Part shown: piece by piece, positions 35,701 to 51,288 of the stretch
How positions within the stretch are numbered: position 1 is the stretch's first letter
Layout: each line of letters opens with the position of its first letter
Assembly: GCA_965235115.1 (NCBI GenBank)
Contig: OZ249441.1
Coordinates: 12,772,001-12,836,000, forward strand
DNA length: 64,000 bases
Source of the DNA: Laetmonice hystrix
Taxonomy: Eukaryota
Direction: 5' to 3'
Translations under genes and position numbers: made by a program
Notes under the pieces: model-generated
The model's database searches: none
Seen by the model: the letters and a program-made list of their open reading frames with translations, nothing else
Told to the model about the DNA's origin: nothing

Positions 35701-37197
35701 CCCTGCACACTTGTTAGATTCAAGGAGTTCATTAAGTCAGTACTTGTCCTGAGTAAAGGTGGCAGAATCCACGAATGGCTTTTTCCTTGTACAGGTTTCC
35801 AGCTGATGTTTCCATCCGACGTACAACTTGCATCTCACGGTAGTATTTTAAGGCATCCTCCCGTGTGAGTGTCACCGTAGTAGCAGGGCCATCATCAATT
35901 TTATGAAGCTTATAGGGCTGAAAACAAATGAGATGAATTATCATTACCATACTTTTAGGTGTACAAGATGCTACTTTTTGACCTAAGACGGCCACTGCCA
36001 GCTATGGATTGTGTCTGGCAAGATAGGCCATGTGTCCTATTATAAAAATACTCCAGAGTGTGGTAGGCCTAGAGTTCACGAAGTATGTACATCACTGTCC
36101 ATGAATTCAAGGACTAAAACTTGAGTTTGTCCAGAGTGTAGAAAAAACAAATCATATTGCAATTTATTGGTAACTTACTGTGAGCACTTCTGTAGTGGCT
36201 TCATTTATTACTGAGCTATAGTTTTTTGATGCCAAGACTCCTGCCAGACCCTGAAAAGATAAAGATGAACTTTTACCTGTAGATCTATTACAAATTGGAT
36301 AGAATGGTTCCTGGGACCTGCAGTGGGCCCAGCATATCGGGCCTATACGCCAAAACTGCAAAAGGCCTAGCTAGATCCCTGGTTGAGGGGCGAGAGGTGG
36401 TGTAGGTTTGATATATTATAGTAGGCCCTATAGGCTAAGGGAATCAGTCATGTGCGCTCACAGAGATTCAAACTAGGGCACACAATGGTATCCTACTTAC
36501 CAAAAATTCGGTTTCCGCGTCGGACTACAGCGACGGCCCAGCGTCACGCACCCGTTCTAAAAATTGAACGCTCCGTTTCCCGAGCAAGCACACAGTGACC
36601 GGGGGGCTCACCGCTGTACCGTGGGCTGCGACAGGTCGTGGGAACGGGGTCTTCAATTTTTAGAACGGGTACGTGACGTGGCCATCGCTGCAGTCCGACG
36701 CGGAAACCAAATTCAATAGAGCGTTTAAGATATCTAGTAATACATGATTTTTGTCACCATGCTGAGATCTACATTTTGGTTATAAGCCCAAGTTTATGGG
36801 AAATAATGCCTTTGCAAAGCCTTGGCCTTGGGTTTACCCTGGTGGTAGCCCCCAGATTGGTGTTAGGTGCACTCAAATTAACAGTAACGTGCATTTTCTA
36901 CAGACAGCTCACACAAAAGTGAGCATGGTGACATAGGCTATATGTTTACCTTTTTAAAATCAGAAACACTTGTTCTTTCTATCAAAATACACAACATAGC
37001 ATAGGCATAGCCATAGCCTAGCCCTAGGCTAGGGATAGATCATAGGTAGATCTAATGGGTAACACTACAGACAGTTAGGCCTATGTAAGGTGTAATGGGT
37101 TTGACTTAGTTTAGCATATAGAGACGTTCCCTTTGCCCCCTGTTACCTGGCGTGTATGAGATAGGCCACGCAGCAGAAGTGAAGTTTTGGACATCAT
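32726..37197 (-). CDS. PDHA1: Pyruvate dehydrogenase E1 component subunit alpha, mitochondrial (9 coding exons)
   Basis: Exons 37197-37147, 36250-36179, 35917-35744, 35261-35135, 34989-34898, 33977-33729, 33527-33388, 33209-33101, 32890-32726. Motifs [25 protein letters not shown]-binding [13 protein letters not shown], phospho-loop [16 protein letters not shown]. Basic/Ser-rich transit peptide [17 protein letters not shown]. Confidence 0.97.
34056..34759. mobile_element. 704-bp non-autonomous TIR element with ~110-bp TIRs and 8-bp TSD (Merlin- or Mutator-like), in a PDHA1 intron
   Basis: Direct repeat CATAAGAC at 34048-34055 and 34760-34767. GG...CC termini. 34062-34166 is the inverted copy of ~34649-34755, with internal GCTAGCCCCCC subrepeats. 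Confidence 0.85.
36505..36713. mobile_element. ~210-bp MITE with ~70-bp TIRs in PDHA1 intron 1
   Basis: GGTTTCCGCGTCGGACTACAGCGA...GTCACGCACCCGTTCTAAAAATTGAA is inverted at the right end (TTCAATTTTTAGAACGGGTACGTGAC...CAGTCCGACGCGGAAACC). AATT flanks both sides (TSD or part of the TIR). Confidence 0.85.
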
Positions 37198-37423
37198 TTT
37201 TAGGCTAATTGATGACCCAACCGTGGGTAGGCCTACGCGAAGAGCTCAAAACCGAGACAGACACCTTCCTTGACCCACCTATACTACTCTCGGTGAAGAG
37301 AGCGCCTTCTGGGAGGTGCCGAGCGCCCGTTGAGAGGTGCCAGTACAGCGGTTAGAGGAGCAGACCATTATTAATATTTGGGGGGTAGGCCTACTATACC
37401 GTATACGTTGACTCTGGTCGCTC

Positions 37424-39753
37424 GAGAGTCAGGCTACCCCCAGGGGCCCCCTATGGGAGGGAACCAAACCAAAACCATCCCATCATCTCCCCCTTGACCT
37501 AGGCTAGGCCTAGACCTAAGATTGTCCCCATCTAATCATTTCTAGGTAGGCGGACTCGTACCTAAAGTCGACCTCTCAAGTGGCACCAAGAGAGTCAGGC
37601 TGCTCCCAGGGGCCCCCTATGGGAGTGAACCAAACCAAAACCATATCCCATCATCTCCCCCTTGACCTAGGCTAGGCCTAGACCTAAGATTGTCCCCATC
37701 TAATCATTTCTAGGTAGGCGGACTCGTACTTAAAAGTCGACCTCTCAAGTGGCACCAAGAGAGTCAGCCTGCCCCCAGGGGCCCCCTATGGGAGGGAACC
37801 AAACCAAAACCATCCCATCACCTCCCCCTTGACCTAGGCTAGGCCTAGACCTAAGATTGTCCCCATCTAATCATTTCTAGGTAGGCGGACTCGTACTTAA
37901 AAGTCGACCTCTCAAGTGGCACCAGGAGAGTCAGGCTACCCCCCAGGGCCCCCCTATGGGAGGGAACCAAACCAAAACCATACCATCACCTCCCCCTTGA
38001 CCTAGGCTAGGCCTAGACCTAAGATTGTCCCCATCTAATCATTTCTAGGTAGGCGGACTCGTACTTAAAAGTCGACCTCTCAAGTGGCACCAAGTGAGTC
38101 AGGCTGCCCCAGGGGCCCCCTATGGGAGGGAACCAAACCAAAACCATCCCATCATCTCCCCCTTGACCTAGGCTAGGCCTAGACCTAAGATTGTCCCTCT
38201 AATCATTTCTAGGTAGGCGGACTCGTACCTAAAGTCGACCTCTCAAGTGGCACCAAGAGAGTCAGGCTGCTCCCAGGGGCCCCCTATGGGAGTGAACAAA
38301 ACCAAAACCATCCCATCATCTCCCCCTTGACCTAGGCTAGGCCTAGACCTAAGATTGTCCCCATCTAATCATTTCTAGGTAGGCGGACTCGTACTTAAAA
38401 GTCGACCTCTCAAGTGGCACCAGGAGAGTCAGGCTACCCCCAGGGGCCCCCTATGGGAGGGAACCAAACCAAAACCATACCATCACTTCCCCCTTGACCT
38501 AGGCTAGGCCTAGACCTAAGATTGTCCCCATCTAATCATTTCTAGGTAGGCGGACTCGTACTTAAAAGTCGACCTCTCAAGTGGCACCAAGAGAGTCAGG
38601 CTGCCCCCAGGGGCCCCCTATGGGAGGGAACCAAACCAAAACCATCCCATCACCTCCCCCTTGACCTAGGCTAGGCCTAGACCTAAGATTGTCCCCATCT
38701 AATCATTCCTAGGTAGGCGGACTCGTACTTAAAATCGACCTCTCAAGTGGCACCAGGAGAGTCAGGCTGCCCCCAGGGGCCCCCTATGGGAGGGAACCAA
38801 ACCAAAACCATCCCATCACCTCCCCCTTGACCTAGGCTAGGCCTAGACCTAAGATTGTCCCCATCTAATCATTTCTAGGTAGGCGGACTCGTACTTAAAA
38901 GTCGACCTCTCAAGTGGCACCAAGTGAGTCAGGCTGCCCCAGGGGCCCCCTATGGGAGGGAACCAAACCAAAACCATCCCATCATCTCCCCCTTGACCTA
39001 GGCTAGGCCTAGACCTAAGATTGTCCCTCTAATCATTTCTAGGTAGGCGGACTCGTACCTAAAGTCGACCTCTCAAGTGGCACCAAGAGAGTCAGGCTGC
39101 TCCCAGGGGCCCCCTATGGGAGTGAACAAAACCAAAACCATCCCATCACCTCCCCCTTGACCTAGGCTAGGCCTAGACCTAAGATTGTCCCCATCTAATC
39201 ATTTCTAGGTAGGCGGACTCGTACCTAAAGTCGACCTCTCAAGTGGCACCAAGAAAGTCAGGCTGCCCCCAGGGCCCCCTATGGGAGGGAATTAACCAAA
39301 CCCAAACCATCCCATCACCTCCCCGTGACCTAGGCTGGGCCTAGACCTAAGATTGTCCCCATCTAATCATTTCTAGGTAGGCGAACTCGTACCTAAAGTC
39401 GACCTCTCAAGTGGCACCAAGAAAGTCAGGCTGCCCCCAGGGCCCCCTATGGGAGGGAACCAAACCCAAACCATCCCATCACCTCCCCGTGACCTAGGCT
39501 GGGCCTAGACCTAAGATTGTCCCCATCTAATCATTTCTAGGTAGGCGGACTCGTACCTAAAGTCGACCTCTCAAGTGGCACCAAGAAAGTCAGGCTGCCC
39601 CCAGGGCCCCCTATGGGAGGGAACCAAACCCAAACCATCCCATCACCTCCCCGTGACCTAGGCTGGGCCTGGACCTAAGATTGACCCGGGCATCTAATCA
39701 TTTCTAGATAGGCGGACTCGTACTTAAAAATCGACCTCCCAAGTGGCCGTCTC
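37424..39753 (+). repeat. Tandem array of 14 copies of a 163-169-bp unit (left arm of the foldback element)
   Basis: Unit starts (GAGAGTC/GTGAGTC/GAAAGTC) at 37424, 37590, 37759, 37926, 38094, 38257, 38424, 38591, 38757, 38924, 39087, 39253, 39421, 39585. The unit contains GGGGCCCC, AACCAAACCAAAACC, CTAGGCCTAG and GTCGAC. Confidence 0.97.
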
Positions 39754-40520
39754 GAGAGTCAAGCCTCGAGAGTCAAGCCACCCTGCTTTTCGCCCGCCTA
39801 CTTAACGTGTCCCATTATGTAACAGGGTCGCATGAAGCCTAGATCTGCATAAAATATCAGCATCACTAACAATGAGGGCAGGTAGGGCGGAGGTCTGCGC
39901 TCTCGGAGTGCCCAATTTCCAGTTTATGGATGAATCTTGACCAATGTATAGATCACAAAATGGGAAATGAGTGATTCAAAAAACACAAAATACGTTAATA
40001 CTTGTTCTCTTTATTGAGCAGGAAAAAATCAAGCTGTTGTTTTTTATAAGGTCAAGTGTATGAAATCGAAATACATCTTGTTATAACTGATTTCCTAATA
40101 ATTTGAAAATTTAAATATGTCTAAATCAAGTATACACCTGCACGGTTTTCTTCTGTACAGTGATATAAGAATTGTTTTAGAGGAAATCGAAGAGAGCGAC
40201 ATTTCAATGAAATCATCTACCAGTCAAAGCAAAAAATACTGAGAGTATTACAAAGTTTAAAAGTGTAAAAAAAGATGGTACCGGTATGTATGCTCTTACT
40301 GTATTTGAGTGTGTGTCTAAGTGGCGAAAAAAATCAAACATTATGCGTATCGACGCAGATTACACATCTAGGCGAAAAAGCTCAAATAACCAGAAAAGTG
40401 TAAAGAAAAATAGTTACATTGCAACATAAAACAAAAAATAAGAAAGACCTGAGCTACATGTCAAATATCCATACCTCACTTATTGCCAGAGGGATTAACT
40501 GCACCGGTTATAGAATCAAC

Positions 40521-40934
40521 AGAAATGATTAGATGGGGACAATCTTACGTCTAGGCATATAGCCTAGGTCAAGGGGGCCCCTGGGGTCAGCCTGACTCTC
40601 CTGGTGCCACTTGAGAGGTCGATTTTTAAGTACGAGTCCGCCTACCTAGAAATCATTAGATGGAGACAATCTTAGGTCTAGGCCTAGCCTAGGTCAAGGG
40701 GGAGGTGATGGTATGGTTTTGGTTTGGTTCCCTCCAATAGGGGGCCCCTGGGGGCAGCCTGACTCTTTTGGTGCCACTTGAGAGGTCGACTTTTAAGTAC
40801 GAGTCCGCCTACCTAGAAATGATTAGATGGGGACAATCTTAGGTCTAGGCCTAGCCTAGGTCAAGGGGGAGGTGATGGTATGGTTTTGGTTTGGTTCCCT
40901 CCCATAGGGGGCTCCTGGGGGTAGCCTGACTCTC
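40521..40934 (-). repeat. Inverted copies (~2.5 units) of the same 167-bp repeat (right arm)
   Basis: Reverse-complement units end at 40934, ~40767 and 40600. The innermost partial unit has an internal deletion joining two G-runs (AAGGGGGCCCCTGGGG). Confidence 0.95.
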
Positions 40935-41300
40935 GAGCGACCAGAGCCAATGTATACGGTATAGTAGGCTACCCCCGAAATATTAATAATGGTCTGCTCC
41001 TCTAACCGCTGTACTGGCACCTCCCAGAAGGCGCTCTCGCACGCGCGAGAAGGGCCAGTCCCTTGACCTTCACTTCACTGTCGCTCCCACAAGACAGGTG
41101 CTGCTCCTGGCGGGAATGTCGCGCGAATCACCTTCCACCCTAGTCTAGCCCGTTTATCGTCTCCGAAATCCCATAGGCCCTAATCTAAAACGCAGACAAA
41201 TAATTTTGATAATTGTTATTATTATCAACAAAGTACTTGCATTATCAATTGTTCTTTTCATTTTGCACATTGTGTAGCAGGCGGGGGCCGCAGCCTTGAT

Positions 41301-41346
41301 CATCACGCCCTCTGTTGTTGGCATATTAACCCAATAGAGGGCGCTG
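41301..41346. promoter_or_regulatory. Pair of divergent CTCF-like motifs
   Basis: CCAATAGAGGGCGCTG (+, 41331-41346) and ACAACAGAGGGCGTG (-, ~41304-41318) both resemble the CTCF core CCASYAGRKGGCRS. Motif match only. Confidence 0.35.
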
Positions 41347-42054
41347 TGACAAATATATTCTCCAATCAAAGAGGCCTAAAATCTGTCTTTAAAGCGCAAC
41401 TTCCGCTATTGATGGTGGAGGAATGGTCTTGTCTGCAAAGGATTTTTGAAGCTAATTTTGTTCATAAATCCCTTCAGTATTGCGTGTAAGTATGACACAT
41501 ATCTTGTTTTATTAACTTGGCTTACTTTCATCCTATATTAATGAGAAGAAAGTTTAGGCACCATAGACAAATACCAATCAGACTCCCGCCCTTTTTTCTG
41601 AAATTGAATAAAATTATTCAGTCACCGAGTGACTGACGACGGTGAACTTAAGAACGTGTTCTTTGATTCAGATCTATCACGGGCGGAATTGACTGGAACT
41701 TTTTTTCACTTAGTCTTAGGCCTACCTGAGTTTTTGAAAAGGGAGTCGCTGAAGCTGTCATCTACATTACTGTCCTGCCAAGTCTACCGCACTTGATTGA
41801 CACCTCTGGCACTGCAAGCATGATAGATCTACTTGATAATGACATTGATACTGAGTGATACTGATAGGTACTAAGTGATAGGGTACCAAGCATAGGTGGC
41901 ATGAATCTCCTGTGGTGTATTGCGGAAATTTCTCCAGTGCATTGCCGATTTTTGCTTTGTCTGCAAGTTAGAGTATCCCACATTGAGTATTTCATGCCTC
42001 ATATATACCTCGTTGACGTTGTCCTTGATACCTCCTTTGCAATGTCAATGATGT

Positions 42055-42569: not shown

Positions 42570-51288
<8,719 letters not shown>

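What the first reader, a model, noticed from the sequence alone, without database searches (positions are those of the whole stretch)
37298..41038. Foldback-like element with satellite-built, highly asymmetric inverted arms beside the PDHA1 start
Seen: the two ends are inverted copies of a ~126-bp outer domain. Each is followed inward by tandem ~167-bp units (14 left, ~2.5 right) around a ~740-bp non-coding AT-rich middle. No ORF, and no 4-9-bp TSD at the apparent termini (left flank CTCGGTGAA, right flank GCACGCGCG). Established: modular inverted arms built from subrepeats define foldback-type elements (Drosophila FB, sea-urchin TU). Inference: this may be an uncharacterised foldback family with unusually long, roughly chromatosome-sized subrepeats, captured as a transposon arm expands into a satellite. 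The missing TSD is atypical and may mean a different mobilisation mechanism or rearranged ends. It could form a large hairpin/cruciform or a phased-nucleosome block next to an essential metabolic gene.
Basis: partly seen in the sequence, partly recalled or inferred. Interest (0 to 1): 0.75.

Follow-up and report, generated by a model that had tools for sequence, protein, structure and literature searches.

The report
Young foldback transposon with satellite arms
This is a real, recently inserted and still polymorphic non-coding "foldback" jumping gene whose two inverted arms are built of 167-bp tandem repeats.

Summary
The element runs from 37276 to 41060 (3,785 bp) and is flanked by a perfect 8-bp target-site duplication, CCTTGACC.

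Contigs from public reads of one sample join 37267 directly to 41061 with one copy of that 8-mer. That is an exact empty-site allele, so the insertion is polymorphic.

The genome holds 32 A ends and 28 B ends, which pair into 27 complete elements of 0.8-9.7 kb. 22 of the 27 have perfect 8-bp duplications. None codes for a protein, and no autonomous partner shares the ends.

Arm sizes range from about 2 to about 30 units, are uncorrelated between the two arms, and change faster than point mutations accumulate. The 167-bp unit was seen only inside these elements.

The outermost 22 nt of the two ends are only weakly alike (9/22). A 104-nt inverted repeat follows.

The 8-bp duplication points to a DDE cut-and-paste transposase. 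The superfamily (Mutator-like, hAT, P or other) is unresolved.

One signature is unexplained: in four imperfect duplications, the A-side copy ends in letters of the element's own B tip.

An earlier agent of this scan reported another foldback family on other DNA of the same genome.

Verdict: new member of a known kind, moderate interest.

The parts
37268..37275 (.). Left copy of the 8-bp target-site duplication, CCTTGACC
   Evidence: Read directly from the sequence. The read joint 37267->41061 has 8 shared letters.
37276..37297 (+). A tip: the outermost 22 nt, CACCTATACTACTCTCGGTGAA. It matches the B tip at only 9 of 22 positions.
   Evidence: Conserved in 32 ends genome-wide, with 0 hits in the reversed-pattern control.
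37298..37423 (+). It contains two tandem copies of a 21-23-nt motif (...GGGAGGTGCC / ...GAGAGGTGCC).
   Evidence: TRF finds period 21 x 2.0 at 37300-37341. Other copies are 95-100% identical. The IR core occurs 67 times in the genome, all inside this family.
37424..39747 (+). A arm: 14 tandem units of about 167 bp. The innermost units are the most diverged, and units a5 and a10 are identical.
39748..40520 (+). Non-coding AT-rich middle, conserved at 96-100% in the other copies and found nowhere else in the genome
40521..40934 (-). B arm: about 2.5 units of the same 167-bp repeat in inverted orientation
40935..41038 (-). B-side subterminal inverted repeat (104 nt, a single copy of the 21-23-nt motif)
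41039..41060 (+). B tip: GCACGCGCGAGAAGGGCCAGTC. Together with the adjacent 27 nt it can fold into a terminal hairpin.
   Evidence: 28 B ends genome-wide, 0 in the control. DNA fold z = -3.3, against z = 0 for the A tip.
41061..41068 (.). Right copy of the 8-bp target-site duplication, CCTTGACC

Best explanation
The stretch 37276-41060 is one copy of a young, non-autonomous, foldback-type class II (cut-and-paste) DNA transposon.

Shown:
- Defined ends.
- A fixed 8-bp target-site duplication.
- About 30 dispersed copies, on average 98.5% alike.
- An exact empty-site allele at this locus.
- No coding capacity in any copy.

Inferred:
- A DDE-type transposase encoded elsewhere binds the repeated 21-23-nt motifs in the subterminal inverted repeats (two at the A end, one at the B end). 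That source may be absent from this assembled haplotype.
- It cuts at the two weakly similar tips and integrates with an 8-bp stagger.
- The 167-bp arrays in the arms are passenger sequence. They grow, shrink and reshuffle by unequal exchange or replication/repair slippage, independently in each arm and faster than point mutation. This produces the strong but copy-specific arm asymmetry.
- Recombination between the inverted arms occasionally flips the middle.

This copy sits about 1 kb upstream of the 5' exons of a PDHA1-like gene on the minus strand.
For: Ends:
- 30 aligned A ends lose similarity exactly before CACC.
- 7 aligned B ends lose similarity exactly after CAGTC.
- Exhaustive pattern searches find 32 A tips and 28 B tips, and 0 in the controls. 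They pair into 27 elements of 811-9,672 bp.

TSD: perfect 8/8 in 22 of 27 elements, with a different sequence at every locus.

Empty site: in all three runs of one sample a contig joins 37267 to 41061, skipping 3,793 nt with 8 shared letters. In run X3 a single 1,329-nt contig runs straight through.

Youth:
- The nearest copy (C3:17144568-17148343) differs at 3 of 1,047 non-array positions.
- Mean divergence of the A outer domain across the family is 1.5%.

Array dynamics:
- Arms are 1.8-28.8 units (A) and 2.5-30.3 units (B), with r = -0.16 and A longer than B in 11 of 23 copies.
- The two near-identical sister copies have 14/2.5 against 12/4.5 units, with reshuffled inner units.

Non-autonomy:
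- The longest ORF in the window copy is 54 aa.
- The 9.7-kb copy holds only foreign non-coding DNA.
- The middle and the IR core occur only in this family.

Inverted middle relative to the ends: two complete copies and one truncated copy.
Against: - No transposase source was found, so the superfamily and the catalytic mechanism are inferred from TSD length alone.
- The outermost 22 nt of the two ends are not a proper inverted repeat (9/22 identical). That is unusual for hAT or P elements.
- The filled allele was not verified by reads that cross the flank-element junctions. The runs are kept as short-read contigs, and no long reads were available.
- Five of 27 copies lack a perfect TSD.
Confidence: 0.88

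Rival explanations
1. The transposase is Mutator-like (MULE/Phantom-type, as for Drosophila FB and as proposed for Tetris). It may act on a donor in which a B tip lies directly 5' of an A tip, as in a circle or head-to-tail concatemer, like the circle junctions of the related bacterial IS256 family.
For: - The foldback architecture with an 8-bp TSD lies within the 8-10 bp reported for Tetris, whose authors argue for Mutator on that basis (PMC4079207).
- There is a long (104-nt) subterminal inverted repeat.
- In all four partly imperfect TSDs, the A-side copy keeps the first n target letters, and its last 8-n letters equal the B tip's last letters...CAGTC. The four copies come from both subfamilies, which argues against one master locus whose flank merely happens to end in CAGTC.
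- That MULEs are related to IS256, and that IS256 and maize Mu form circles, is from my own knowledge. It was not checked here.
Against: - MULE TSDs are usually 9-11 bp.
- No MULE gene is linked to these ends.
- The assembly contains no B|A junction.
- There are only four scarred copies.
- The flap model is my own construction.
Confidence: 0.3
2. The transposase belongs to the hAT or the P superfamily. Both typically give 8-bp TSDs, and P includes the foldback-like Galileo, which has tandem repeats in its arms.
For: - The TSD is exactly 8 bp in 22 copies.
- Galileo shows TIR extension by about 140-bp tandem repeats and 7-8-bp TSDs (PMC4168063).
- The two ends carry different numbers of subterminal motifs, as with hAT and P ends (own knowledge).
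Against: - The tips are CACCT... and (reverse complement) GACTG..., not the hAT YARNG (own knowledge of that consensus).
- The hAT target pattern nTnnnnAn is absent: T at position 2 in 4/22 and A at position 7 in 5/22.
- There is no perfect terminal inverted repeat of the kind P and Galileo have (9/22).
- No transposase is linked to the ends.
Confidence: 0.4
3. It is not a transposon insertion but an assembly artefact, or a local inverted duplication of a satellite array.
For: - The reads of the one available sample contain the empty junction.
- No contig listed there crosses the flank-element junctions.
- Arrays of 167-bp repeats are hard to assemble.
Against: - An artefact would not recreate an exact 8-bp duplication at exactly the ends shared by 27 copies on 14 contigs.
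- In two of three runs the right-flank contig stops exactly at 41061. That is what a branch between filled and empty alleles would give.
- The unit count within the array could still be mis-assembled.
Confidence: 0.04
4. It moves by a mechanism that leaves no TSD (Helitron/Helentron-like or another). Helentron-derived carriers of about 166-bp satellite-like repeats are known in oysters.
For: - The tips are asymmetric and not inverted.
- There is a hairpin at one end only.
- Tandem repeats are carried by a non-autonomous element (PMC7492417, listed).
Against: - Perfect 8-bp TSDs at 22 loci, and an empty site with a single copy of the 8-mer.
- The repeats lie in inverted arms, not in one direct array.
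Confidence: 0.02

Closest known systems
Tetris, a foldback transposon of Drosophila virilis (PMC4079207)
   Same: [quoted passage not shown]
- TSD of 8-10 bp.
- All copies non-autonomous, with no transposase source found.
   Different: - The sequences are unrelated.
- Tetris repeats also form kilobase-sized satellite arrays outside the element. Here the units are confined to the elements.
- Tetris repeats share a 37-bp stretch with the flanking domain. Here unit and outer domain show no significant similarity.
- This family has 27 complete copies with clean TSDs, against 3 for Tetris.
Galileo (P superfamily, Drosophila; PMC4168063)
   Same: - Foldback-like long inverted arms.
- Arms can be extended by direct tandem repeats of about 140 bp.
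- TSD of 7-8 bp.
- Great structural variation between copies.
   Different: - Galileo has proper TIRs and known transposase-coding copies.
- Tandem repeats occur in a few Galileo copies only.
- Galileo's target is AT-rich with a palindromic motif. No target motif was seen here.
Drosophila FB and sea-urchin TU elements
   Same: - Long inverted arms made of tandem subrepeats.
- Heterogeneous arm lengths.
- A variable middle.
   Different: - FB subrepeats are 10-31 bp, and TU outer-domain repeats are about 15 bp, reaching close to the tips.
- Here the units are 167 bp and lie behind a unique 126-148-nt terminal domain with non-identical tips.
- The FB TSD is 9 bp.
The 172/175-bp foldback family of the same genome (earlier finding s1-319923; locus L062)
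   Same: - Same genome and the same architecture: inverted arms of nucleosome-sized tandem units.
- TSD of 7 or 8 bp.
- Reported as recently mobile.
   Different: - Unrelated unit and unrelated, symmetric TIR (CAGCAGTGTGAAG...).
- That family has almost no middle in the copy I read.
- It has about 200 ends, against 60 here.
Tandem-repeat-carrying non-autonomous elements of bivalves (Helentron-derived carriers of Cg170-type repeats; PMC7492417)
   Same: Short arrays of satellite-like units of about 160-170 bp, spread through euchromatin by a non-autonomous mobile element.
   Different: - Those elements carry one direct array.
- They are rolling-circle elements without TSDs.
- This element has inverted arms and 8-bp TSDs.

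Membership tests
Foldback-type elements (structural class: FB, TU, Tetris) | Long inverted terminal arms | tested here: met
   Arms are 91-97% complementary over up to 363 nt per register. The outer domains are paired.
Foldback-type elements (structural class: FB, TU, Tetris) | Arms built of tandem subrepeats whose number varies between copies | tested here: met
   167-bp units: 14 and 2.5 here, and 1.8-30.3 per arm across 23 copies.
Foldback-type elements (structural class: FB, TU, Tetris) | Dispersed copies flanked by target-site duplications of fixed length | tested here: met
   27 complete copies on 14 contigs. Perfect 8-bp TSDs in 22. Empty-site allele.
Foldback-type elements (structural class: FB, TU, Tetris) | Non-coding or variable middle; most copies non-autonomous | tested here: met
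   No ORF over 54 aa. The middle is conserved but non-coding. One 811-bp copy has no middle.
hAT superfamily | 8-bp TSD | tested here: met
hAT superfamily | Short TIRs beginning YARNG, and target pattern nTnnnnAn (both consensus patterns from own knowledge) | tested here: not met
   The tips are CACCT and GACTG. T at TSD position 2 in 4/22 and A at position 7 in 5/22.
hAT superfamily | An autonomous relative with the same ends that encodes a hAT transposase | tested here: not met
   Tips, IR core and middle occur only in the non-coding family. Absence from one assembly is not proof.
P superfamily (P, 1360, Galileo) | 7-8-bp TSD | tested here: met
P superfamily (P, 1360, Galileo) | Matching terminal inverted repeats at the very tips | tested here: not met
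   The outermost 22 nt are identical at 9/22 positions. The inverted repeat starts at nt 23.
P superfamily (P, 1360, Galileo) | THAP9-type transposase partner | not tested
   No family search for P transposase was run, and no element shares the ends.
Mutator/MULE (including FB/Phantom) | TSD usually 9-11 bp, sometimes 8-9 | tested here: inconclusive
   The TSD is always 8 bp here, at the low edge of the range. Tetris, at 8-10 bp, was assigned to Mutator on this basis.
Mutator/MULE (including FB/Phantom) | MULE transposase partner sharing the long TIRs | not tested
   No linked transposase was found. The genome does hold MULEs according to earlier notes, which I did not check.
Helitron/Helentron carriers of satellite-like repeats | No TSD; insertion between fixed dinucleotides | tested here: not met
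   8-bp TSDs of varied sequence.

The most novel reading that the evidence does not exclude
The family is moved by a transposase that accepts two non-identical ends and acts, at least sometimes, on a donor in which a B tip abuts an A tip, such as an excised circle or a head-to-tail concatemer. The 5' strand at the A end would be cut 1-5 nt outside the tip. Letters of the B tip (...CAGTC) would then travel as a flap and overwrite the adjoining part of the new 8-bp duplication. That would be a circle- or concatemer-based DDE pathway in an animal, readable from genomic scars, and possibly an undescribed transposase lineage.
Probability: 0.12. Interest if true: 0.7.

Novelty: new member of a known kind. 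Interest (0 to 1): 0.4.

Why it matters
- The family is small, young and completely enumerable: 27 full copies with exact ends, exact TSDs, and a segregating empty site next to an essential metabolic gene.
- It is therefore a clean natural system for measuring how fast tandem arrays inside transposon arms expand, contract and flip relative to point mutation. This is the step at which transposon arms are thought to seed satellite DNA. Here near-identical sister copies already differ by several units in each arm.
- The polymorphic 3.8-kb insertion about 1 kb upstream of a PDHA1-like gene also allows a direct allele-specific test of whether such a hairpin-prone, nucleosome-sized array affects a neighbouring promoter.
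- The B-tip letters found in four A-side duplications may give a handle on the cleavage chemistry of an unidentified transposase.

Tried and rejected
1. Autonomous partner.
   - The tips (23-mers, up to 2 mismatches), the IR core (23-mer, up to 3 mismatches) and the 711-nt middle occur only in the non-coding family.
   - An 18-mer of the A tip at up to 3 mismatches gave no excess over the control beyond the family.
   - A four-copy look-alike was internal to another repeat. Another look-alike was a 43-bp minisatellite.
2. The longest copy (9.7 kb) as a possible coding copy. Its centre is foreign DNA with a 93-bp tandem repeat and no ORF over 139 aa.
3. Unit derived from the terminal domain, as in Tetris. 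The local alignment is no better than shuffles, 42 of 300.
4. Units moving from one arm to the other by double unequal inversion. This was suggested by equal totals (16.5 units) in the two sister copies. The extra B units of one copy are not the missing A units of the other, so the idea is unsupported. Inverted middles do exist in a few copies.
5. Target-site motif. None is clear in 22 sites, apart from an enrichment of GAC/GTC in the 8-mers counted by eye.
6. A chromosomal head-to-tail B|A junction. None found.
7. Rfam search of the element. Nothing.
8. Fetching all copies whole.
9. Organism. Names are coded. No taxon-specific literature or Repbase/Dfam check was possible.
Full report
**Observation**

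- Tandem Repeats Finder reports a 167-bp array of 14.0 copies at 37424-39747, with 95% matches. It reports 2.2 copies of the reverse complement at 40572-40934.
- The inverted-repeat search pairs the right arm with many registers of the left arm at 91-97% complementarity. It also pairs the outer domains, 37321-37388 with 40969-41036.
- The stretch between the arms is AT-rich, GC 0.30-0.40.
- The longest ORF inside is 54 aa, and Rfam finds nothing.

**True ends and the TSD**

- The own-genome search with the 126-nt outer domain returned 40 scored matches at 94-100% identity on many contigs.
It stops sharply before CACCTATACTACTCTCGGTGAA.
It stops sharply after ...GCACGCGCGAGAAGGGCCAGTC.
- In the window the element is therefore 37276-41060 (3,785 bp), and it is flanked by CCTTGACC on both sides (37268-37275 and 41061-41068).

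**The family**

- Exhaustive pattern searches of the 627-Mb assembly find 32 A tips and 28 B tips, and none for the reversed control patterns.
- They pair into 27 complete A...B elements of 811 to 9,672 bp.
- I fetched the missing flanks as 46-nt pieces and compared both sides. 22 of 27 elements have perfect 8/8 duplications, each of a different sequence.
- No target consensus stands out in the 22 sites. In particular the hAT-like nTnnnnAn pattern is absent.
- The AT-rich middle is part of the family. It is 96-100% identical in the other copies, with a few subfamily-specific indels, and occurs nowhere else in the genome.
- The 23-nt core of the inverted repeat occurs 67 times, always in this family.
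- A 28-mer of the unit occurs about 550 times. That number fits the summed arm lengths, and all listed places lie inside elements. The 167-bp repeat is thus an arm-confined array, not a free satellite.

**Recent mobility**

- Public runs from one sample, kept as contigs, were laid on 36300-41900.
- All three runs contain a contig that joins 37267 to 41061, skipping 3,793 nt with 8 letters that fit both sides. In run X3 a single 1,329-nt contig runs through the junction into both flanks.
- The skipped stretch is the element plus one copy of the 8-mer, so this is an exact empty site without a footprint. The simplest reading is the pre-insertion allele, which makes the insertion polymorphic.
- In the other two runs the right-flank contig ends exactly at 41061, as expected at a branch between two alleles.
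- The listed contigs do not cross the filled junctions, so the filled allele rests on the assembly and on the TSD logic.
- The nearest copy (C3:17144568-17148343) differs from the window copy at 3 of 1,047 positions outside the arrays.
- Mean divergence of the A outer domain across the family is 1.5%.

**Arm dynamics**

- From the coordinates of tips and middles, A arms hold 1.8-28.8 units and B arms 2.5-30.3.
- The two arms are uncorrelated (r = -0.16), and the A arm is the longer one in 11 of 23 copies.
- The window's 14-against-2.5 asymmetry is therefore a state of this copy, not a property of the family.
- The two near-identical sister copies have 14/2.5 and 12/4.5 units. Their five outermost A units, two innermost A units and outermost B unit are the same to within one difference (most are identical), while the inner units are reshuffled.
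- Within the window array, units a5 and a10 are identical, and the innermost units are the most diverged.
- Arrays thus change by multi-unit events faster than substitutions accumulate.
- Two complete copies and one truncated copy carry the middle inverted relative to the ends, as expected from exchange between inverted arms.
- One 811-bp copy has lost the middle and is a pure hairpin.
- I tested whether units pass between arms by double unequal inversion and found no support.

**Ends and mechanism**

- The outermost 22 nt of the two ends agree at only 9 positions. After that the ends are inverted repeats for 104 nt, at about 92-93% identity.
- The A end carries two tandem copies of a 21-23-nt motif and the B end one. 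This is the kind of unequal set of binding sites known from other DDE transposons (own knowledge).
- The B tip with its neighbouring 27 nt folds into a hairpin (z = -3.3). The A tip does not (z = 0.06).
- A fixed 8-bp duplication implies staggered DDE-type integration.
- No copy codes for a protein. No other element in the assembly shares tips, inverted-repeat core or middle.
- The transposase source is therefore unknown and may be absent from this haplotype.
- TSD length is compatible with hAT, P, some Mutator-like elements and a few rarer superfamilies. The tips and targets do not fit the hAT consensus, and the imperfect tips do not fit P or Galileo.
- The authors of Tetris used an 8-10-bp TSD and the foldback form to argue for Mutator.
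- I leave the superfamily open.

**An unexplained signature**

- Of the five elements without a perfect TSD, one has no match at all (C1:61.39 Mb).
- In the other four, the A-side 8-mer keeps the first n letters of the target, and its remaining letters equal the last letters of the element's own B tip (...CAGTC).

| Copy | A-side 8-mer | B-side 8-mer |
|---|---|---|
| C12 | TGTCAGTC | TGTAAACG |
| C5:8.86 Mb | GCTCAGTC | GCTCGGAC |
| C7:34.3 Mb | GGATAGTC | GGATAACC |
| C30:1.0 Mb | CCCCCTGC | CCCCCTGG |

- By my own rough product of the per-copy odds, chance agreement is of the order of 1e-8.
- The four copies belong to both subfamilies. That argues against one master locus whose flank merely happens to end in CAGTC.
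- My tentative reading is that a short 5' flap is carried over from a donor in which a B tip lay directly before the A tip. No such junction exists in the assembly.
- This reading is inference only.

**Context**

- Conserved PDHA1-type exons lie on the minus strand at about 33.4-36.0 kb, and a presequence-like exon lies near 36.2-36.3 kb.
- The A end of the element is therefore about 1 kb upstream of the gene's 5' end, in the spacer to a plus-strand gene that begins near 43.4 kb.
- Between the gene and the element lies a very high-copy short repeat, about 36490-37090.

**Comparison and novelty**

- The architecture matches foldback elements with tandem-repeat arms: Tetris, Galileo copies with repeat-extended arms, and FB/TU (own knowledge).
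- The same genome holds at least one other such family, with unrelated ends and 172/175-bp units. An earlier agent judged it a recently mobile new member of a known kind. I re-read that locus and confirmed its structure.
- I found no paper describing the present family.
- Repbase and Dfam could not be consulted, and the organism's name is coded.

**Verdict**

- It is a real, young, polymorphic, non-autonomous foldback transposon.
- It is a new member of a known kind, with a clean data set on array turnover and one curious scar.
- Interest is moderate.

Noticed in passing
A-side flanks of copies at G000 C12:14692964, C5:8861599, C7:34317090 and C30:1006350 (loci L012, L021, L019, L025): In four imperfect TSDs, the part of the A-side 8-mer next to the element reads as the last 1-5 letters of the element's own B tip (CAGTC). 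The total length stays 8. One further copy (C1:61388494-61395127) has no TSD at all.
   Followed up: partly
G000 C18:4201916-4204981, C8:11817799-11820675, C6:8728549-8731446, C13:11804267 (loci L006/L015, L007/L018, L008/L020, L016): A derived subfamily has an A-type arm on both sides and a shortened middle. On both sides it is embedded, in inverted orientation, in about 380 bp of another shared sequence that begins (G)TATGGAATACCGGTGACG and contains a 110-nt palindrome. This is a foldback nested inside another mobile-looking unit, present at four loci.
   Followed up: partly
window 36490-37090: A very high-copy short repeat lies between the PDHA1-like 5' exons and the element. Summed contig depth there is in the thousands to tens of thousands, against about 35-80 for unique flanks, and there are many variant joints at 36935-37092.
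   Followed up: no
G000 C13:24072488-24073021 (locus L094): A 43-bp minisatellite whose unit contains CCTATACTACTCTCGG, a 16-nt exact match to positions 3-18 of the A tip. It may be chance (about 0.3 expected genome-wide) or a hint to the origin of the tip.
   Followed up: partly
G000 C30:4621071-4630742 (loci L050, L061): The longest family member has about 4 kb of foreign DNA next to its middle, including a 93-bp tandem repeat of at least 13 copies. No long ORF.
   Followed up: partly
G000 C1:11966654-11968523 (locus L087): Two short hairpin-only derivatives of the element sit 1,342 bp apart in direct orientation. This is a local tandem duplication that includes the spacer.
   Followed up: partly
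window 43470-43730 (+): An 86-aa ORF rich in Ser at its start and ending ...[11 protein letters not shown].... It is probably the first coding exon of the divergently oriented neighbour gene.
   Followed up: no
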